Positions 333-62,748 of a DNA stretch of 64,000 nucleotides are shown piece after piece. The stretch covers positions 6,261,058 to 6,325,057 of the forward strand of contig NC_068984.1 of the NCBI RefSeq assembly GCF_001194135.2, in the 5' to 3' direction. This DNA comes from Octopus bimaculoides (lineage: Eukaryota). A program made the translations under genes and the position numbers. Within the stretch, counting starts at the first letter, position 1. The number at the start of each line of letters is the position of its first letter. The notes under the pieces are model-generated. The model saw nothing but the letters and a program-made list of their open reading frames with translations. It was not told where the DNA came from and searched no databases.

Positions 333-2710
333 CTAGCAGAAATACCCAGCATTGCCAGGGTTAAAGATAATAATGAGATGAGATTTCATTCAAAAATTTG
401 ATATAAGAGTTTTTTCATAATAATTATTGTGATTAATGATTCTAACATAACTGGCATAACCAATTATGTGAGATCAACTACAATAATATACAGGAAATAG
501 AAAATGCATAAAAGCAAGTTCTGATAAAACTTCTTTACATACAACATTATGAGTTTTTCACAGAGGTGTACAAATAAACAGATTTTTTTGAGCTTCCAAC
601 ACATGAACATCCAACATACAATTGTCCATGAGAGAAGCAAAGCTCCTCTGATTGCAAACCAGTTGCTGATAATGTCTGTCCATGCGATTTGTTGATAGAC
701 CTTGCAAAACTTAGTCTAACAGGAAACTGTACTATCTTAAATTGTACTGGAAAATGAGTAGGTATTAATGGAATTCTAGCAATGAATACATTATCACATG
801 CTCCAGAGAGTACAGTAGCTTCTATAATATGTGGCATCATTTTCTTCACAATAAGTCTTACTCCACTACACAATTTTAGAGGATCTAAATTTCTTAGAAG
901 CATTATAGGTGCTCCAAGTTTCAAGCCAAGCTTATGAGGAGGTAAATCTGATGGTTCCAGTGAGTTTTAAAATTCAACTGGATAATTTACTACTTGTGAT
1001 TGGTCAACAACAGTGTCACTAGATCTATATGATTGGCAATGTCCAAGAAGGCACTTTAAGAGTTCAAAGTTTATTTCATTCACTGTTGTATTTTTCGAGG
1101 CTAGAACTGCCCTTTCACTCAACCATTTGTGATTCTTATGTTGTGTACTGAGATTTGGGAAGACTTTGTTAATAAGTTCTTTCTCTGATTTCCCCACTGT
1201 GCAGATAGGTGATGGGTTTATTGCACCATTTCATTGTCTACAGATACTCTTCTTTTTCTCAGTATTAATAAGTCTTGAGCAAAGATGATAACACTCATGT
1301 TTGAAAATCCAAATATTCTCCAAAATACTCCATTGCTGCTGATGTATCTACTTTGTTGATATCTACTGATATCATCTTGCACATCCTGTCTTTGTAGAGC
1401 ATATATTGCAGCATCAGATCCTTTGTTTTCATATTTGAAGACATATTTAATGGATTACGCTGAGCTGCAAAATTCAACATTGATATGAGCATTAAATATT
1501 TTGAGTAACAATGGGCAATATGGAACAATCCACCTATTGTCAATATGAAGTTGTCCAACTTTTGCTTGGAAACCTCCATCTCCAGGTTTTCTTCTTCTGT
1601 AGGATGGATTAACATCATTTCAAAGTTCAGTATTTTTCAAAAAACTTCTTGGATATTTCTTTGTGCATCTATTGTTGTTCGTGAATTCTTGTTAAAAGCT
1701 CCACATGGGCCATGTATCATTTGAATCTTCACTATTTCATGCAATGCTCTGTCTTTGATGGATCAGGCAGCTCTGCAGATATTAGTTTGTCAATTTGGTT
1801 AGAGTGAAATTTTTCATGCAACCAAATAAGAATGTGTGCATGAGGTACTCCACGTTTCTGCCATTCTATAGTGTATAGATGACATCTGACTGGTCCAAAG
1901 ATATTTCCTTTTGTGATGACATTCATCAGTTTCAACATTGTCCTAGTAGTGAGGTCGTGTTTATTTACATGTGCTTGATGTGGAGGCAATTCATTTTGAA
2001 TCTCTTACCACTTTCGATTACATGTGGAAGTTATGAATAGGTCTGGTCTACCAAAGTTCCTAACATATGTCATGGCATACTGTATTCTTTCATGCTTATA
2101 TTTGGGGGCTACCAGTAAAGCTGGATAGAAAGATGCACAATTTCTCAATGTCTTCAGCAGCAACTTCGTTATTGATGCAGTCACATAAATGAATGTATGG
2201 CTCAGATATTAATTCTTTCTGGTGAGTCTTATGAATGCTAATATTTCTGCCTTGACTTTTTCATACATGTCCACAGCAAATTGATGGAACAAATTTTGCA
2301 TTCAGTGGAGTGAATTGAAATTGTCTTGATGAATCATAAAATGGTAGGAGTAAAAATCCATATATGAAACTGTTTTTCCGGTATTATCATTTTCCTCATT
2401 TTGAGAGATTTTAAAATGGTATCCATCTTCCCTATCCACATTAATTAAAGGGCATTGGTGAACATCATAAGAGTGATGTGTTTCATTTATTCTCTGTAAT
2501 TGATTATCTCTCCTCTGAAGGATTATGTCATGCTTACCATGCTTTTCTTCAGATATTACAATAGCAACTTCATTACTTTCAGGTGCACTATAGCGGAGTG
2601 AATGCGCTCCTGGTGGTCACTTGTCAGTATTTCTCTTCTACAGGCACATTTTCTAGGGCATATTTGAAACTTCTAATATAGCTGTTTCTTTTACATAACA
2701 CATCTTGTAG
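333..2710 (-). mobile_element. Degenerate, internally deleted Helitron (Rep/helicase pseudogene) with intact 3' terminus
   Basis: Minus-strand translation: Rep motif 1 FITSTCN (~2017-2037); HUH motif EWQKRGVPHAHILIW (1822-1866); MIHGPCG; motif 3 NPSYRRRK (~1587-1610); IDNRWIVPYCPLLLKIFNAHINVE; PIF1 helicase C-terminus LPPHKLGLKLGAPIMLLRNL...QFPVRLSFARSINKSHGQTL...FSHGQLYVGCS (547-966). Ends in CTAG (333-336) with a GC-rich hairpin at 345-360. Many stops and frameshifts. Confidence 0.95.

Positions 2711-22962: not shown

Positions 22963-23043
<81 letters not shown>
22950..23043. repeat. (GA)n microsatellite within a long polypurine tract
   Basis: Direct reading; purine bias continues to ~23340. 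Confidence 0.95.
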
Positions 23044-23045
<2 letters not shown>

Positions 23046-24159
23046 TTTATGTGGGGTGATTTGGGGCAGAGAAAAGTTTGTAATCAGTAGAAGGAACAAG
23101 ATACAAATTGTGTTAAAGATGATAAAAGCCAATTATAAAATGTAGGGAGTGGAGGGTGGTAGAAAGTGGAGATGAGAGGAAAGAAAAATGCAATAAGAGA
23201 GAAGGGAGAGGGAGGAGAGAAGGAGAAAGAGGGAGAGAGACAGAGACAGAGAAGATAAAGAGTTGAAGAGAATTATGGAAAGAGGGTGGAGGAATAAAAA
23301 AAAAAATTAGAAAAGAACAAGTTAGAAGTAGATCATTCAAGACAAAATATATAAACAAAATAAATATATTGATGAATTACATACATTTTACACACACACA
23401 CACACACACACATTTACTCACACACACATTTACTCACACACACATTCACTCACACACACACACATCCACCTCCTGATAAATGTTCTACCTTTGTAAATGT
23501 TGAAGGTATTTTGATGGATTCAAAGAGAAGTTTTTTTCTTCAACATTTCATCTCTTCATTCTGTACTTATTTTTTTTTTTGTATCTGTGTTTTCATTTGA
23601 TATACTTTGTATATTTTGTTTTTTTCCCTTGTATATTTTCTCCCTCTTCCTTTCTTATTTATCTTTTTTATACCTTTGCAACACATTTCTTTTCAAGTCA
23701 AAGCTCTCTGATGAAAGAATTGTTCCAAGTTATGTTCACACACACACACACACTCAAACAAATGCACATTTTTATGCATAATGCATTTATAAATGTGAAT
23801 GCACACACAGATATATATATATAAAAGCTGTCTCATAGATGTACTCAGGCACATATGCATCCATAAAAGTGTGCATACATAATCACAGATGTCTGTGCCT
23901 TTATATGCAAATAAACTGTATACAAATGCACATGGACACATACACTCAAAAATGCATATATGAATTTGTGTACATCTGTATATATTCTAATACTGACTTA
24001 TATGCATGTACACCATACATTCTCATACATAATGAGAATCCTGATTATATGTTTTGTGTAAGTTAGATATGTATACACTGGTAATAGTAAAGGAGGAGGA
24101 AAATTCCTTCGAAATATCACAATACATTGATGGGGAAAAAAAAAGTTTTGATAGTTGAG

Positions 24160-24696: not shown

Positions 24697-25112
24697 CGGC
24701 ACTGTCCGAGCGTGTTCATTGCCAGAGCAGCTGTCTGGCTTCCGTGCTAGTGGCCCATAAATAGCACCATTTGAGCGTAATCGTTACCAGCGTTGCCTCT
24801 AGCACTTGTGCTGGTGGCACGTTAGAAAATCATTCGATCGAGGTCATTGCCAGTGATGCAGGACTGACTCCTGTGCAGGTGGCATGTAAAAAACACCTTT
24901 TTGAGCATGGTTGTTGCCAGTACCGTGTGACTGGCCCTCGTGCTGGTGGTACGTAAAAGCACCCACTACACTCTTCGAGTGGTTGGTGTTAGGAAGGGCA
25001 TCCAGCTGTAGAAACTCTGCCAGATCAGATTGGAGCCTGGTGCAGCCTTCTGGCTTGCCAGTCCTCAGTCAAATCGTCCAACCCATGCTAGCATGGAAAG
25101 CGGACATTAAAC

Positions 25113-25164
<52 letters not shown>
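24697..25164 (+). mobile_element. RTE LINE 3' UTR, well preserved, four diverged ~60-66-bp modules and long (GAT)n tail
   Basis: CpG-rich; terminal segment GTTAGGAAGGGCATCCAGCTGTAGAAACTCTGCCAGATCAG...GGAAAGCGGACATTAAACGATGATG. Confidence 0.9.
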
Positions 25165-25167
<3 letters not shown>

Positions 25168-26803
25168 GTGACCATTTTAAAGAAAAATGGTTCTGTGAGA
25201 GTCTAATTGGAAGATTATTTGACTGCTATTTCCAGCAGGTTGAACGACCGTGTAGAGGCTTCCTCGATGGGTTGTCATGATAAATGGTACTTAGTGTACT
25301 GCAGCTGTTGCTAATAATTTCAATTATAACAATTGAAATAGTAACTTCTACAAAATTATTCATTTGACAAATAAGTTACATTAGCAATATATGAAATGGT
25401 TCTAATTTGTCACAAATAGCATTTTTATAATTAGCAACAAGTAATTACATTTTATAGCAGAGCATAATGTAATACACCCCACTACTAGAACTTCTTGTAT
25501 AAATACAGAGAACAAAATCCTTGATATTAATATAGTTGCACTAATAGCATTGATGATTACAAAGTCTCTAAGTATTGTAATGAAGACAGGTGTAGAAAAG
25601 ACATTATCTTTCTCTGACTAAGATATACAAAAACCATTAATCACAATGATAATACTTATCATATGCTTGCAATAAAAAAAATTAAATGAATTTTAAAAGA
25701 AATATTGTTAAATATGTGGTAAATTTCTTGATATTGTTTAAATTGGATCTCAGGGATTTTACCCGCCCTAGATAGAAGCCTTTATGCAGTCAGTTGACCT
25801 GCTAGAAAGAGCTGAAAAAGAATGAGAATAAAGCCACAAAACATTACATAGGAACATTTTGTTAAGATTGTTATTAGCCATTTCTTTCAAAGTTGTTTAA
25901 AGATAAAGAAGCTAAAATTCTCAAGTTACTGTATTAAAGAACATAGCATCACCATTATCATTTAAACATCAGCTTCTCCAAGCTTGCATAGGTTAGATCA
26001 GGGGTTGGCAAAGAGATCAATATTCATTTCTGGGGGGTGAGGTCTATGTGGCTTTTCAAGGCCCAGTAGGCCCAGTGCTGAACTTTTCAAAAGATTGAAG
26101 GTCTCCAAATGTATGTTTGGATGTAATTTTTCAAAAGTACAATTAATGTCTAAGCTAACATAAAAAAAGCTCAAATTGAAGAAATTTTATGACATTTTCA
26201 ATATGTGGAAAATTGAATATGTGGAAATTTAAATATGTCAAAAATTAACCAAAATAAAAGAATGGCCTGAAAATTTCATTTTGACACAAAATAAATAGCT
26301 TTTTGTCATCCAATGGATGAAAATAGAAGCTAAAGTAAAAAATTTATTTATATCCAGGTGATTAATTTGTTACATTAGCCAGCAAAATTTACTCAAATTT
26401 TACAATGTTTTCCATAATTGTTGTAATTTTGTGGAAAAAGGGCTCAAGGTAACATTCAAAGGCTACTCACTCTTGAAAATTCAAGATATATGCATAATTA
26501 AGGATTAGATTCCAAAATATTATCCTTTTCCTTTTTTACCAAAAATTGTTGATATTTGATATAAGTTTTGCCAATTTTTACCTATCTTATAATTTTCATA
26601 AAATCTTGGTTTACATTTTCTGATTATAACAAAAATATCCTTCTGAGTGTTTTTTACTTTCTAAAGAAACATGGGAATATGGGAGATCTAGGGATAGCAG
26701 TAACATAACTTATGAAATAAGAAAGTAAAGTCAATAAGAAGAGTTTACAGGACATAATTTGTGTCATAGATTAAATATGCTTTACAAACATAACTGAAAA
26801 AAT

Positions 26804-27362
26804 TTACTTGACAACAAGAACTATGATGCAGAAAAGTAATTCAGAAGTTGATAACTTGTATTCAGTATCAGATTTTAATTGAATATAATTTACTAAGGCA
26901 TTTGTTTCTCTCAAAGATCCTTCTTCTCTAATGAAACAATATCTTGTGAAATGTCCTCCTATTCTACAATTTTTGTACTATGATATAGTCTGTTTTTGCA
27001 GCTGATTAACTTCTTCATCACAAATCAACCAAGACCTGGTGAATGTGTTTTTCAAATCTGACCTATCTTTTTCCCTAAACGTGTCCTGATTTTTTTGAGA
27101 AATTTGTTACAGGCCTCCAAACCAGATTCATCAACCTGACCAAATGCATTTGTTCTCATTAGCCCCAATATGACTTAGTAACTTAAGCATGGTTGGTGTA
27201 AGGCTGATCCAATTTAGGTCTATTTGAAAGAACTAGTAAAGGCCAAATCTGATACTTTAGTAATGTTTTGCATAGATACGATCTATGGTATCAAAGGTTC
27301 TCAGAATACCAGCTAACTCAGTGCCAAAATATTTTAACTTGCTCAGATCAGTTTCTTTTATT
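26804..27362 (-). pseudogene. RAG1-like / Transib-superfamily transposase C-terminal remnant with CCHC-type tail
   Basis: Reconstructed across two frameshifts: KETDLSKLKYFGTELAGILRTFDTIDRIYAKHY*SIRFGLY*FFQIDLNWISLTPTMLKLLSH / LMRTNAFGQVDESGLEACNKFLKKIRTRLGKKIGQ / DLKNTFTRSWLICDEEVNQLQKQTIS*YKNCRIGGHFTRYC. Parallels RAG1 ITNYFHKTLAH...GAWASEGNESGNKLFRRFR...HWLYTS; catalytic Glu codon at 27115-27117; CCHC-type motif at 26936-26977. Confidence 0.75.
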
Positions 27363-59310: not shown

Positions 59311-59389
59311 ATTATTTTTATTATCATTACCATTATTATCATTATAATTGTTATCATCATCCTCATCACCATTATTATTATTTTTATTC

Positions 59390-60588
59390 AGTGCCAGCTG
59401 ACCAGTCCCATGCTGGTGGCACGTAAAAGGCACCATTCGAGCATAGTCATTGCCAGTACTGCCGGACTGGCTCCCGTGCTGGTGGCACGTAAAAGGCACC
59501 ATTCGAGCATAGTCATTGCCAGTACTGCCGGACTGGCTCCCGTGCTGGTGGCATNNNNNNNNNNNNNNNNNNNNNNNNNNNNNNNNNNNNNNNNNNNNNN
59601 NNNNNNNNNNNNNNNNNNNNNNNNNNNNNNNNNNNNNNNNNNNNNNNNNNNNNNNNNNNNNNNNNNNNNNNNNNNNNNNNNNNNNNNNNNNNNNNNNNNN
59701 NNNNNNNNNNNNNNNNNNNNNNNNNNNNNNNNNNNNNNNNNNNNNNNNNNNNNNNNNNNNNNNNNNNNNNNNNNNNNNNNNNNNNNNNNNNNNNNNNNNN
59801 NNNNNNNNNNNNNNNNNNNNNNNNNNNNNNNNNNNNNNNNNNNNNNNNNNNNNNNNNNNNNNNNNNNNNNNNNNNNNNNNNNNNNNNNNNNNNNNNNNNN
59901 NNNNNNNNNNNNNNNNNNNNNNNNNNNNNNNNNNNNNNNNNNNNNNNNNNNNNNNNNNNNNNNNNNNNNNNNNNNNNNNNNNNNNNNNNNNNNNNNNNNN
60001 NNNNNNNNNNNNNNNNNNNNNNNNNNNNNNNNNNNNNNNNNNNNNNNNNNNNNNNNNNNNNNNNNNNNNNNNNNNNNNNNNNNNNNNNNNNNNNNNNNNN
60101 NNNNNNNNNNNNNNNNNNNNNNNNNNNNNNNNNNNNNNNNNNNNNNNNNNNNNNNNNNNNNNNNNNNNNNNNNNNNNNNNNNNNNNNNNNNNNNNNNATG
60201 CTGGTGGCACGTAAAAGGCACCATTCGAGCATAGTCATTGCCAGTACTGCCGGACTGGCTCCCGTGCTGGTGGCACGTAAAAGGCACCATTCGAGCATAG
60301 TCATTGCCAGTACTGCCGGACTGGCTCCCGTGCTGGTGGCATGTAAAAAGCACCATTCAGGCATGGTTGATGCCAGTACCGCCTGACTGGACTCATGCTG
60401 GTGGCATGTAAAAAGTGCCCACTACACACTCAGAGTGATTGGCATTAGGAAGGGCATCCAGCTGTAGAAACTTTGCCAGATTGGATTGGAGCCTGGTGCA
60501 GCCTTCTGGCTAGCCAGCCCTCAGTCAAACCGTCCAATCCATGCCAGCATGGAAAGCGGATGCTAAATGACGATGATGACAAAGATGA
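59390..60588 (+). mobile_element. RTE LINE 3' UTR with identical 66-bp tandem units flanking a gap
   Basis: Units start at 59411, 59477, 59543 | 60199, 60265, 60331; terminal RTE segment and GAT tail at 60415-60588. Confidence 0.85.
59555..60197. other. Assembly gap (643 N)
   Basis: Run of N. Confidence 1.
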
Positions 60589-61704
60589 TCATCATTATTA
60601 AGGCAGCGATTTTGTATAACTGTTAGAGCACTGGACAAAATAAATTTTGTTATTTCTTCTGACTCGTTACATTCTGAATTCCTCATCTTTTCATATTAAA
60701 TACCTGTACCAATACAATTATTTCTTCTGCATAAATCTACTGATAACTCTAAAACTCAATTTCTTTTGCAACTCATATTGTACATCTGACAATTACATTT
60801 AATTTGCAACTAGCCAATCACTGTAGGTTCCTGACACTTTTACTGCTGATATTTCATCAACACATGGCATCATGCTTCTGATGCTGAACACACCTCACAT
60901 TAATCTCTTTCTTACAGAGATATCATCTTTGTCATTAACAATTCTATAAACTTCTTTCCATTCAATTAGTAGCCATTATACTGCCATCAACATATAATAA
61001 ATATATCATTAACAAGTATAAAATTTAAAATAATTCATGTCTAATAATAAAACTGTAGGTCTTAAGTTATAACAACAACAACAACAACAAATACAAGTAT
61101 ACTGTAACATAGTTATTCTTATGAAGAAGTGGCAGTTTTGATGTCATCAGTCTAACATAAAAGTATGAGAAAATGACCAAAGGCAAAATAATGAACCTTT
61201 ACAGCAAATGCCTAATTAAAATTAGTGCATTAAAGCCAGCATAGCTCAGTGAATTTACAGTGCTTTAACATAACTTAGAAGCATTTGAAAGTTTACATTC
61301 CTAGGTTCAAACTCTACTATGAATAATTCATTTACATTTTATTAGTTATGGATAATAAATAGCATTGATGTGGAAGCAATGTTCATCCATCAGTAAATCT
61401 ATTGTGTGTGATTCAAATCTATTCCTATTGTAACTTACATCACTCTTTCAAAACTATTCTTCTTTAGAACTTCTCTGTTGAACTCTTTCTAGCTATGAAC
61501 TGTATCAACTATTTACGAATCCTGCCTCTTTAAATATATAATGTATTAGATACTCATCACATGTTTATTGTAAACCAAAGAAAAACAAATAATTGTGTGT
61601 CTACTGTTGCACTTTGATTTGCAACTGTTCAAGAGAAATATCAACTGCAAGAGTCAACAACATATCTTCTATGTGATCATTCACTCTGCTGCTAGAAATA
61701 GCTG

Positions 61705-62532: not shown

Positions 62533-62748
62533 AGTACTGCCTGACTGGCCCTCGTGCCGGTGGCATGTAAAAGCACCCACTACACTCTTGGAGTGGTTGG
62601 TGTTAGGAAGGGCATCTAGCTGTAGGAACTCTGCCAGATCAGATTAGAACCTGGTGCAGCCATCTGGTTCGCCAGTCTTCCGTCAAATCGCCCAACCTAT
62701 GCCAACATGGAAAGCAGACATTAAACGATGATGATGATGATGATGATA
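62533..62748 (+). mobile_element. RTE LINE 3' UTR end
   Basis: Terminal segment plus (GAT)n. Confidence 0.9.

What the first reader, a model, noticed from the sequence alone, without database searches (positions are those of the whole stretch)
26804..27362. Hidden RAG1-like (ProtoRAG/Transib) transposase fossil with a CCHC C-terminal tail
Seen: absent from the ORF track because of three stops and two frameshifts (~27165, ~27058), the minus strand gives WISLTPTMLKLLSH ... FGQVDESGLEACNKFLKKIRTRLGKK ... TFTRSWLICDEEVN ... YKNCRIGGHFTRYC. Established: RAG1 has YFHKTLAH (Zn ligands H937/H942), SEGNE962SGNKLFRRFR and HWLYTS in this order and spacing. Transib shares the PTxHK..H and ExRNK motifs. 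Amphioxus ProtoRAG RAG1L and other invertebrate RAG1L proteins end in a C-x2-C-x3-GH-x4-C tail that I recall being absent from vertebrate RAG1 and insect Transib. Here that spacing is exact, with the first Cys one substitution away (TAC for TGC); the first His is likewise one substitution away (CTT for CAT). Inference: a cephalopod lineage hosted a RAG1L-type transposon. I recall RAGL reports from bivalves and nemerteans but not cephalopods, which needs checking.
Basis: partly seen in the sequence, partly recalled or inferred. Interest (0 to 1): 0.85.

Follow-up and report, generated by a model that had tools for sequence, protein, structure and literature searches.

The report
Dead Transib transposase tail fragment
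This is a broken, non-functional leftover of the last ~115 codons of a Transib-type "cut-and-paste" transposase, a relative of the immune-system enzyme RAG1. It is real, but it is an ordinary transposon fossil and not evidence for a RAG1/RAG2-like (ProtoRAG) element.

Summary
The quoted peptides, three stops, two frameshifts and the two "one substitution away" codons are all present on the minus strand.

Standard searches found nothing: Pfam, PDB and the word-indexed protein search.

An exhaustive search of 1.84 billion proteins with one exact 40-aa window piece returned a single hit, P0066 (E 3.5e-4). P0066 reads in frame across both window frameshifts and the stop. It has an intact Cx2Cx3GHx4C knuckle. 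It is 58% identical to the joined window peptide and 66% identical at DNA level over 264 nt.

Both sequences match the published ctenophore MleTransib_3931 far better than any of 50 RAG1L proteins: 97.8 vs 45 bits for P0066, 62.8 vs 40 bits for the window peptide. A frameshift-tolerant scan with a profile of four published Transibs scores the locus 57.5 bits, against a null of 25.6±1.8 (p~4e-11).

The literature states that this knuckle tail (CTT1) is shared by RAG1L and Subgroup I Transibs, so the tail does not point to RAG1L.

I found no RAG2L, no upstream catalytic core and no TIRs.

Verdict: a 5'-truncated Subgroup-I-type Transib relic at 27202-26855 (minus strand). The superfamily call is right; the ProtoRAG/RAG1L inference is unsupported. 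Low-to-moderate interest.

The parts
26855..27202 (-). Whole supported relic: the last ~115 codons of a Transib-type transposase (ZnH2 motif to ancestral stop), with two frameshifts and one internal stop
   Evidence: Frameshift-aware profile alignment to four published Transibs: 57.5 bits over 27202..26858, null 25.6±1.8. BLASTP of the joined peptide vs MleTransib_3931: 34% identity over 115 aa, 62.8 bits. tblastn of MleTransib_3931 has its best window hits here. GC rises to 0.33-0.375 here against 0.25-0.29 in the flanks.
27170..27202 (-). ZnH2 zinc-ligand motif LTPTMLKLLSH, the Transib form P-T-x-H-K-x-L-x-H. The first His is now Leu (CTT, 27187-27185); the second His is kept (27172-27170).
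   Evidence: Aligns to ISPSVHKLLGH of MleTransib_3931 and MTPTLHKLLVH of ApsTransib_1266. Segment test against the Transib profile: 17.7 bits, 1 of 1200 nulls as high. Not significant against the RAG1L profile.
27147..27150 (-). First frameshift (+1; one extra base about 27148), lying in a short deletion relative to Transibs
   Evidence: Traceback of the frameshift-aware alignment; codon positions.
27055..27147 (-). Helix with the third catalytic carboxylate: AFGQVDESGLEACNKFLKKIRTRLGKKIGQI. Glu at 27117-27115 aligns with RAG1 E962; N-K at 27108-27103.
   Evidence: Best hit of the whole six-frame window to a RAG1L C-terminal HMM. As an exact 40-aa query it finds P0066 as the only hit among 1.84e9 proteins. 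Aligns to VSEGGIEACNKLLRRYRTRLSRKRSQ of MleTransib_3931.
27052..27058 (-). Second frameshift (-1, one base missing about 27055), with a 2-codon deletion
   Evidence: P0066 reads ...LGRKTSQIENLTDTFTRFWL in one frame. The window needs a shift between ...GKKIGQI and LKNTFTRSWL.
26981..27052 (-). C-terminal domain segment LKNTFTRSWLICDEEVNQLQKQTIS, with conserved W-L (27031-27026)
   Evidence: Aligns to NLTDTFTRFWLNSDEEVNQQRKMTL of P0066 and to NLYDCAKRLWVSSDPVLENMRLKNL of MleTransib_3931.
26978..26980 (-). In-frame stop TAG, at the position where P0066 has Trp and MleTransib_3931 has Val, immediately before the knuckle
26936..26977 (-). CTT1/CTT* zinc knuckle YKNCRIGGHFTRYC (Cx2Cx3GHx4C). The first Cys is now Tyr (TAC, 26977-26975).
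   Evidence: Spacing is exact. The intact counterparts are CKTCEIRGHSTRYC in P0066 and CKKCSGRGHIGRYC in MleTransib_3931. The motif is defined in PMC7204232.
26855..26935 (-). Post-knuckle tail FIREEGSLRETNALVNYIQLKSDTEY, plus AAG (26857-26855) where the homologue has its TAA stop
   Evidence: EEG-L-E--ALV-Y is shared with P0066 and EEDALVS with MleTransib_3931. The DNA alignment to L001 runs to 26883; beyond that I read the and 65 sequences by eye.
27204..27269 (-). Possible further upstream piece in a third frame (KTLLKYQIWPLLVLSNRPKLDQ vs Transib ...LRViSS...). Weak.
   Evidence: 17.2 bits, p~0.03 for this segment. A competing weak reading in another frame (RIYAKHY.. vs RVYATE..) covers the same bases, so neither is established.

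Best explanation
The locus is a dead, 5'-truncated remnant of a Transib-superfamily DNA transposon. The type is the one whose transposase ends in the CTT1 (CCGHC) zinc knuckle: 'Subgroup I' of Tao et al. 2022, whose closest described member here is MleTransib_3931 of the ctenophore Mnemiopsis.

Only the last ~115 codons of the transposase survive (27202-26855, minus strand). In the active ancestor this part would have supplied four things, by homology with RAG1, BbeRAG1L and HzTransib:
- two His zinc ligands that hold the zinc-binding domain together;
- the third catalytic carboxylate of the DDE triad, in the helix ...E-A-x-N-K...;
- the helical C-terminal domain;
- a zinc-knuckle tail, which in BbeRAG1L clamps terminal-inverted-repeat DNA.

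Today the piece cannot work. It lacks the RNase-H-fold core with the two catalytic Asp. It has two frameshifts and an internal stop. It has lost one zinc-ligand His, one knuckle Cys and its own stop codon.

Shown: the homology, the damage, and the absence of the rest of the gene in the window.
Inferred: the roles of the individual residues (by alignment only), the neutral decay, and the Subgroup I assignment (from the nearest neighbour and the tail only).
For: 1. Unbiased reverse search. The exact window piece 27174-27055 finds one protein, P0066, among 1.84e9 (E 3.5e-4).
2. P0066 is in frame across both window frameshifts and the stop, with an intact knuckle. It is 58% identical over ~96 aa. 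Its contig L001 aligns at DNA level, 66% over 264 nt, E 7e-9.
3. P0066 vs MleTransib_3931: 49% identity over 102 aa, 97.8 bits; its best RAG1L gives 45.1 bits. The window peptide scores 62.8 bits vs MleTransib_3931 and 40.4 bits vs its best RAG1L. It also hits ApsTransib, PbaTransib and MplTransib.
4. tblastn of MleTransib_3931 against the window has its top two hits at the locus (E 2.8e-5 and 0.024).
5. Frameshift-aware profile scan with four published Transibs: 57.5 bits vs null 25.6±1.8, Gumbel p~4e-11. With P0066 added the score is 76 bits.
6. The ZnH2 motif is significant against the Transib profile (p~7e-4).
7. P0066 vs a RAG1L C-terminal HMM: 41 bits, or 32 bits without the knuckle; 2000 shuffles reach at most 5 bits. 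hhalign gives 95.9%. This places the family in the RAG1/Transib superfamily.
8. CTT1 is shared by RAG1L and Subgroup I Transibs, and MleTransib_3931 is shown among the latter.
9. There is a GC island over the relic.
Against: - Pfam (including RAG1 PF12940) and PDB single-sequence searches do not recognise the window peptide or P0066.
- The Transib sequences were taken from machine-read PDF supplements and may contain reading errors. For MleTransib_3931 the protein and the printed CDS agree in this region.
- Only four Transibs and 50 RAG1L proteins, mostly of the bivalve/deuterostome kind, were compared. No proper phylogeny was made, and deep RAG1L lineages were not included.
- The Subgroup I assignment rests on one nearest neighbour plus the tail.
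- No TIRs, TSDs or other copies were found, so the element as a whole is not defined.
- The frameshift-aware scan is my own implementation. It gives false high scores on microsatellites, for example about 23.3 kb. The locus itself has no tandem repeats.
Confidence: 0.87

Rival explanations
1. One reading: a relic of a RAGL (ProtoRAG-type) transposon, that is, a RAG1L gene that once sat tail-to-tail with a RAG2L gene.
For: - The relic aligns colinearly to a RAG1L C-terminal HMM, knuckle included: 22.6 bits for the joined peptide and hhalign 85%.
- The frameshift-aware scan with the window-derived background scores 30-37 bits vs null ~22±2.
- It has W-L, as in the RAG1(L) motif WLYSS.
- RAGL elements are known in other molluscs (PMC7204232).
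Against: - Both the window peptide and P0066 score about twice as high against MleTransib_3931 as against the best of 50 RAG1L proteins.
- The zinc-ligand motif is PTxHK (Transib form), not NYLHK, and is not significant against the RAG1L profile.
- A RAG2L HMM built from 15 proteins finds nothing above noise on either strand. That includes the expected convergent position at 24-26.8 kb.
- The CCGHC tail does not discriminate between the two families.
- The protostome RAGL TIR consensus is at chance level.
Confidence: 0.07
2. Chance resemblance in AT-rich non-coding DNA, picked out by eye.
For: - Identity to any RAG1L is only 17-27%.
- With a SwissProt background and harsh penalties, 5 of 200 random strands scored as high against the RAG1L profile.
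- Standard libraries are silent.
- A codon-distance test was not significant (p 0.09).
Against: - An independent homologue was found without any family assumption, and it repairs the frameshifts and the stop.
- 57.5 bits vs null 25.6±1.8 against published Transibs.
- DNA-level match with E 7e-9.
Confidence: 0.01
3. A retroelement Gag nucleocapsid zinc knuckle (Cx2Cx4Hx4C) lying next to unrelated sequence.
For: The knuckle is of the retroviral nucleocapsid pattern. A RAG1L C-terminal profile weakly hits HIV NCp7 chains through this motif (E 0.03-0.1).
Against: - There is no Gag, protease or RT signal in Pfam for the region.
- The knuckle is colinear with, and at the conserved distance from, the E-x2-NK helix and W-L, exactly as in MleTransib_3931 and P0066.
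- The post-knuckle tail is also conserved with them.
Confidence: 0.01
4. A still-functional exapted piece: a host exon or regulatory element derived from the transposase tail.
For: P0066 keeps a 134-codon open frame on its contig. In both sequences detectable similarity starts at roughly the same point.
Against: - The window copy has two frameshifts, an internal stop and lost zinc ligands.
- The two copies are only 66% identical at DNA level.
- No gene with this product is on record. P0066 forms a single-member cluster on one 1.5-kb contig.
Confidence: 0.03

Closest known systems
MleTransib_3931 (Mnemiopsis leidyi; Tao et al. 2022, PMC9435367, Supplementary Data 2), shown by the authors among Subgroup I Transibs
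   Same: It has the same order and spacing of the PSVHKLLGH zinc-ligand motif, the G-x-x-x-E-x-G-[IL]-E-A-C-N-K catalytic helix, R-Y-R-T-R-L-x-R-K, W, the Cx2Cx3GHx4C knuckle and the EEDALVS tail. Identity is 34% over 115 aa to the window peptide and 49% over 102 aa to P0066.
   Different: MleTransib_3931 is a full-length predicted transposase of about 700 aa with candidate TIRs. The window holds only the last ~115 codons, broken, with no TIRs.
P0066 / contig ERZ27259413:k141_387605 (unnamed ORF in an ENA metagenome assembly)
   Same: This is the closest relative found: 58% aa identity and 66% nt identity, with the same tail after the knuckle.
   Different: Its frame and knuckle are intact. 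The contig is 41% GC, against about 34% for the window. Its source organism is unknown. It too shows no recognisable Transib sequence upstream of the ZnH2 region, but the contig ends only 76 nt upstream of the ORF.
Invertebrate RAG1L of RAGL transposons (BbeRAG1L, PDB 6B40; CviRAG1L and other bivalve RAG1L, PMC7204232)
   Same: Same superfamily. It shares the E-A-x-N-K helix with the RAG1 E962 equivalent, W-L, and the CTT* CCGHC knuckle at the same distance.
   Different: Identity is only 17-27%. RAG1L has NYLHKxxEH rather than PTxHKxLxH. RAG1L comes with a convergent RAG2L gene, which is absent here.
Subgroup II Transibs (HzTransib, PDB 6PQN; ApsTransib_1266, MplTransib_1482)
   Same: They share the PTxHKxLxH motif and the SEE..E-A-R-N-K helix. 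The window peptide hits them at 30-38 bits.
   Different: They end in a different tail (CTT2, acidic or other) without the CCGHC knuckle.
Vertebrate RAG1
   Same: Homologous ZnH2, E962 helix and C-terminal domain. The RAG1L C-terminal profile hits RAG1 chains at 1e-32.
   Different: RAG1 has an acidic C-terminal tail and no knuckle. It is a domesticated host gene, not a transposon relic.

Membership tests
RAG1/Transib transposase superfamily | Third catalytic carboxylate in a conserved helix (RAG1 E962 in ...E-S-G-N-K...; Transib ...E-A-R-N-K...) | tested here: met
   Glu at 27117-27115 in ESGLEACNK aligns to this column in the RAG1L HMM and in four Transibs. This is by alignment only; no activity was tested.
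RAG1/Transib transposase superfamily | ZnH2 pair of His zinc ligands (H-x4-H; RAG1 H937/H942) | tested here: inconclusive
   The motif is present and significant against Transibs. In the present sequence the first His is Leu (CTT) and only the second His remains. That fits a decayed copy.
RAG1/Transib transposase superfamily | RNase-H-fold core with the two catalytic Asp (RAG1 D600, D708) and the ZnC2 Cx2C | tested here: not met
   Nothing beyond noise was found upstream or elsewhere in the window, using the 551-position RAG1L HMM and the 779-position Transib HMM. The one marginal hit, at 28537-28387, lies in a SINE-like repeat. The relic is 5'-truncated.
RAG1/Transib transposase superfamily | Terminal inverted repeats starting CAC (RSS-like heptamer) and 5-bp target-site duplication | tested here: inconclusive
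   CACWRTG heptamers are no more frequent than chance and none pairs up near the relic. The protostome RAGL TIR consensus is at chance level. With one truncated copy, the ends cannot be defined.
Subgroup I Transib (Tao et al. 2022) | CTT1 tail with the Cx2Cx3GHx4C knuckle | tested here: met
   YKNCRIGGHFTRYC has exact spacing and 4 of 5 motif residues. The knuckle is intact in the homologue P0066.
Subgroup I Transib (Tao et al. 2022) | Closer in sequence to Subgroup I Transibs than to RAG1L or Subgroup II Transibs | tested here: met
   Bit scores for the window peptide: MleTransib_3931 62.8, best RAG1L 40.4, ApsTransib 36.2, PbaTransib 30.4, MplTransib 29.6. For P0066: 97.8 vs 45.1. These are pairwise scores only, with no tree. 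PbaTransib_0868 scored low, and its printed sequence is visibly corrupted near the C-terminus.
Subgroup I Transib (Tao et al. 2022) | [quoted passage not shown] | not testable with these tools
   These parts of the element are not present in the window.
RAGL (ProtoRAG-type) transposon | Convergent RAG2L kelch-repeat gene next to RAG1L | tested here: not met
   A RAG2L HMM from 15 proteins was applied by hmmsearch and by frameshift-aware scan. No hit exceeded the reversed-sequence controls, and the hits at 23-24.5 kb are microsatellite or low-complexity artefacts. A very decayed RAG2L could escape detection.
RAGL (ProtoRAG-type) transposon | RAG1L-type sequence (for example NYLHKxIEH, and closer to RAG1L than to Transib) | tested here: not met
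   The upstream motif is not significant against the RAG1L profile (p~0.2). Transib scores exceed RAG1L scores.
Retroelement Gag zinc knuckle (Pfam zf-CCHC) | Cx2Cx4Hx4C in a Gag/nucleocapsid context | tested here: not met
   There is no zf-CCHC or Gag hit in Pfam for the peptide. The context is a transposase C-terminus.

The most novel reading that the evidence does not exclude
The relic and P0066 could represent a lophotrochozoan or cephalopod branch of the CTT1-bearing lineage that sits at the Transib/RAGL boundary. Alternatively they could be the last trace of a true RAG1L-RAG2L element whose RAG2L half has been deleted. Either would extend the known host range of the immediate relatives of the RAG ancestor to cephalopods, where none has been reported in the papers I could search.
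Probability: 0.08. Interest if true: 0.6.

Novelty: new member of a known kind. Interest (0 to 1): 0.27.

Why it matters
Subgroup I Transibs are proposed to be the intermediates from which the RAG1L-RAG2L transposon, and ultimately the V(D)J recombinase, arose (Tao et al. 2022).

A mollusc-wide survey found a single Transib element (PMC10294476). Martin et al. 2020 list cephalopod data among the resources available but report no cephalopod RAGL. If the window really is cephalopod, this relic is one more data point on the distribution of that lineage in protostomes.

On its own it is a short, dead, single-copy fragment. It says nothing about activity, about RAG2L, or about adaptive-immunity origins.

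A practical lesson: the CCGHC tail should not be used to tell RAG1L from Transib.

Tried and rejected
**Searches that found nothing**
- Pfam scans of the joined peptide and of P0066 gave no RAG1 or zf-CCHC hit.
- PDB phmmer with the peptide and with P0066 gave noise only.
- The word-indexed search of 5.8e9 proteins with the joined peptide gave 0 hits.
- Scans of JGI metagenome contigs, IMG/VR and GTDB genomes with the P0066+window alignment found no relatives.
- Exact-product look-ups of three window ORFs, meant to identify the organism, found nothing on record.
- A literature search for the sample accession and for cephalopod RAGL found nothing.
- Rfam gave no match in the window.

**Tests for other parts of an element**
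- RAG2L HMM search and frameshift-aware scan: nothing.
- The full RAG1L and Transib HMMs found no upstream core.
- The TIR consensus and the CAC heptamer are at chance level.
- There are no other copies in the window.

**Statistics that were weak or sensitive to settings**
- A codon-distance test for decayed coding sequence was not significant (p 0.09; z about -0.8 against simulated alignments).
- My first significance test against RAG1L (SwissProt background, harsh penalties) gave only p~0.025 per strand. With a window-derived background p ranged from 4e-5 to 2e-3. I treated this as suggestive only, until the Transib comparison settled it.

**Source rejected as unreliable**
- The machine-read alignment in supplement file 6 of PMC7204232 shows identical garbled rows for different species.
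Full report
**Observation**

On the minus strand the four quoted peptides are at these positions:
- WISLTPTMLKLLSH, 27211-27170
- FGQVDESGLEACNKFLKKIRTRLGKK, 27144-27067, in another frame
- TFTRSWLICDEEVN, 27046-27005
- YKNCRIGGHFTRYC, 26977-26936

The stops and the two frameshifts are real. So are the two codon statements: TAC is one change from TGC, and CTT is one change from CAT. The window is AT-rich (about 34% G+C), full of SINE-like repeats and microsatellites, and has four assembly gaps. No other copy of this sequence is in the window.

**First round: standard tools fail**

The hand-joined 172-aa peptide gave nothing in Pfam at E<=10, only noise in the PDB, and nothing in the word-indexed search of 5.8 billion proteins.

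The literature confirms that Cx2Cx3GHx4C defines the CTT* tail of invertebrate RAG1L (PMC7204232). It also shows that cephalopod data were listed as available in that study without any cephalopod RAGL being reported.

**Test against RAG1L**

I took the oyster CviRAG1L sequence from that paper's supplement and retrieved 50 invertebrate RAG1L proteins. Most end in the knuckle.
- An HMM of their C-termini has its best hit in the whole six-frame window at 27174-27055, but only at E 0.12.
- The joined peptide scores 22.6 bits, colinear through the knuckle. hhalign gives 85%.
- HMMER cannot cross frameshifts, so I wrote a frameshift- and stop-tolerant profile alignment and calibrated it on simulated second-order Markov copies of the window.
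- With a SwissProt background and harsh penalties, the locus (26.2 bits) was matched by 5 of 200 random strands.
- With an amino-acid background taken from the window itself, it scored 30.5-37.2 bits against about 22±2. That gives a Gumbel p of 4e-5 to 2e-3 per strand, depending on penalties.
- The alignment covered only 27147-26918. The upstream 'zinc-ligand' peptide was not supported against RAG1L (p~0.2).
- Identity to any RAG1L was 17-27%.
- The full-length RAG1L HMM found nothing else upstream.
- A RAG2L HMM built from 15 proteins found nothing.
- The protostome RAGL TIR consensus was at chance level.

At this stage the RAG1L reading was suggestive, not established.

**The decisive result**

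The exhaustive HMMER search accepts only exact window translations. I submitted the 40-aa frame piece 27174-27055. Among 1.84 billion representatives it returned exactly one protein, P0066 (134 aa, E 3.5e-4, 62% identity).

P0066 reads ...GLGEFDESGLEACNKLLRKYRTQLGRKTSQIENLTDTFTRFWLNSDEEVNQQRKMTLPWCKTCEIRGHSTRYCEFKYVEEGPLKEVDALVSYMKSEQEN. What this shows:
- It continues in one frame across both window frameshifts and the stop.
- It has the intact knuckle: Cys where the window has Tyr.
- It shares a conserved tail after the knuckle.
- Over ~96 aligned residues it is 58% identical to the joined window peptide.
- It comes from a 1545-bp contig of ENA metagenome assembly ERZ27259413 (L001).
- That contig aligns to window 27132-26883 at 66% nucleotide identity (E 7e-9).
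- Its TAA stop aligns with AAG at 26857-26855 (sequences).

**What family?**

P0066 matches the RAG1L C-terminal HMM at 41 bits, or 32 bits without the knuckle. Two thousand shuffles reach at most 5 bits, and hhalign gives 95.9%. It therefore belongs to the RAG1/Transib superfamily.

That score is at the level at which the same kind of profile sees HzTransib (49 bits). It is far below RAG1 and BbeRAG1L (110-174 bits).

Two papers say the knuckle tail is not RAG1L-specific:
- Martin et al. 2023 say the CCGHC tail has been identified in Transib transposons.
- Tao et al. 2022 state that CTT1 (= CTT*) is shared by RAG1L and Subgroup I Transibs, while Subgroup II Transibs have a different tail.

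A motif search of Tao's Supplementary Data 2 turned up MleTransib_3931 of Mnemiopsis...KISPSVHKLLGHSDWDLIALNDNCGLGTVSEGGIEACNKLLRRYRTRLSRKRSQHDNLYDCAKRLWVSSDPVLENMRLKNLPVCKKCSGRGHIGRYCPSSISTVIQEEDALVSS.... Three further Transibs came from the same supplement.

BLASTP results:
- P0066 vs MleTransib_3931: 49% identity over 102 aa, 97.8 bits. Its best of 50 RAG1L proteins gives 45.1 bits.
- Window peptide vs MleTransib_3931: 34% over 115 aa, 62.8 bits, now including LTPTMLKLLSH aligned to SPSVHKLLGH. Its best RAG1L gives 40.4 bits.
- The window peptide also hits the fungal ApsTransib and MplTransib through the W..TPT.HKLL.H and E-A-x-N-K segments.

Further support:
- tblastn of MleTransib_3931 against the window has its two best hits at the locus.
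- My frameshift-aware scan with an HMM of the four published Transibs alone gives 57.5 bits over 27202-26858, against 25.6±1.8 (maximum 29.9), Gumbel p~4e-11.
- Adding P0066 raises the score to 76 bits.
- The zinc-ligand segment is now significant on its own (p~7e-4).

**Anatomy (minus strand)**

| Coordinates | Feature |
|---|---|
| 27202-27170 | ZnH2 motif LTPTMLKLLSH; first His now Leu |
| about 27148 | +1 frameshift |
| 27147-27055 | Catalytic helix; Glu at 27117-27115 aligns with RAG1 E962 |
| about 27055 | -1 frameshift, with a two-codon deletion |
| 27052-26981 | C-terminal domain with W-L |
| 26980-26978 | TAG stop |
| 26977-26936 | Knuckle; first Cys now Tyr |
| 26935-26858 | Conserved tail |
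| 26857-26855 | Former stop codon, now AAG |

A G+C island (0.33-0.375 vs 0.25-0.29 in the flanks) coincides with the relic. There are no tandem repeats in it.

A possible further 22 codons at 27269-27204 are only marginal (p~0.03). A hit at 28537-28387 lies in a SINE-like repeat and is discounted. No other part of a Transib or RAG1L core is detectable anywhere in the window. The core is better conserved than the tail, so I conclude it is absent rather than merely decayed. The relic is therefore 5'-truncated.

**How it works**

It does not work now. In the active ancestor this region would have provided, by homology with solved RAG1, BbeRAG1L and HzTransib structures (established knowledge; residues assigned by alignment only):
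- two of the four zinc ligands of the zinc-binding domain;
- the third carboxylate of the DDE active site;
- the C-terminal helical domain;
- a zinc-knuckle DNA clamp for the transposon ends.

This last role is as reported for BbeRAG1L CTT* in the papers cited. The two catalytic Asp are missing, the frame is broken, and zinc ligands are lost, so no active protein can be made.

**Comparison and novelty**

The specific inference of a ProtoRAG/RAG1L-type element rested on the belief that the knuckle tail marks RAG1L as opposed to Transib. The literature and the sequence comparison here contradict that. No RAG2L is present.

The best description is a relic of a Subgroup-I-type Transib, which makes it a new member of a known kind. 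Transibs are reported from hundreds of metazoans but appear rare in molluscs: one element in a mollusc-wide survey.

**Limits**

- I could not verify that the window is cephalopod.
- I could not find further relatives.
- No phylogeny was made.
- The Transib sequences come from machine-read PDFs.

Noticed in passing
window 547-924 (-): A 125-aa ORF (GAPIMLLRNLDPLKLCSGVRLIVKK...) matches the Pfam Pif1 helicase 2B domain (PF21530, E 2e-7). It is probably the C-terminal end of a PIF1-like helicase of the kind carried by Helitrons, that is, another transposon relic.
   Followed up: partly
window 59344-60408, around the N run 59555-60197: The sequence on either side of the largest assembly gap is duplicated: 59410-59554 equals 60198-60342 at 100%. 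It consists of tandem ~66-nt SINE-like units. This looks like an assembly or scaffolding artefact in a tandem array.
   Followed up: no
window 24919-25133, 60375-60589, 62533-62747 and families D3, D10, D12-D14, D17: There are several families of short interspersed repeats, 60-92% identical to one another, many ending in (GAT)n runs. One of them lies at 28.4-28.9 kb, just upstream of the relic, and produced a spurious weak Transib hit.
   Followed up: partly
window ~23000-23500 (+), ~25130-25280 (+): (CA)n-rich and (GAT)n microsatellites give false high scores (38-48 bits) in frameshift-tolerant profile scans with the RAG1L, RAG2L and Transib profiles. Markov-simulated nulls do not model this, so any such scan needs repeat masking.
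   Followed up: yes
L001 446-736 (-): On the homologue's contig a 96-aa gene was called on the opposite strand, overlapping the 3' end of P0066 (convergent orientation). It has no similarity to the RAG2L HMM and no Pfam hit on record. It is probably a spurious ORF.
   Followed up: partly
L001 53-190 / P0066 residues 1-28: The homologue also loses recognisable Transib similarity just upstream of the conserved region: its ZnH2 motif is degraded to FLTNRGDH. In MleTransib_3931 the predicted last exon starts only a few codons before ISPSVHK. The shared boundary may reflect an intron, a common truncation, or coincidence.
   Followed up: no
PMC7204232 supplementary file 6 as held: The machine-read alignment shows identical, garbled rows for different vertebrate RAG1s. 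It should not be used as sequence data. File 7 (per-locus protein sequences) reads much better.
   Followed up: yes
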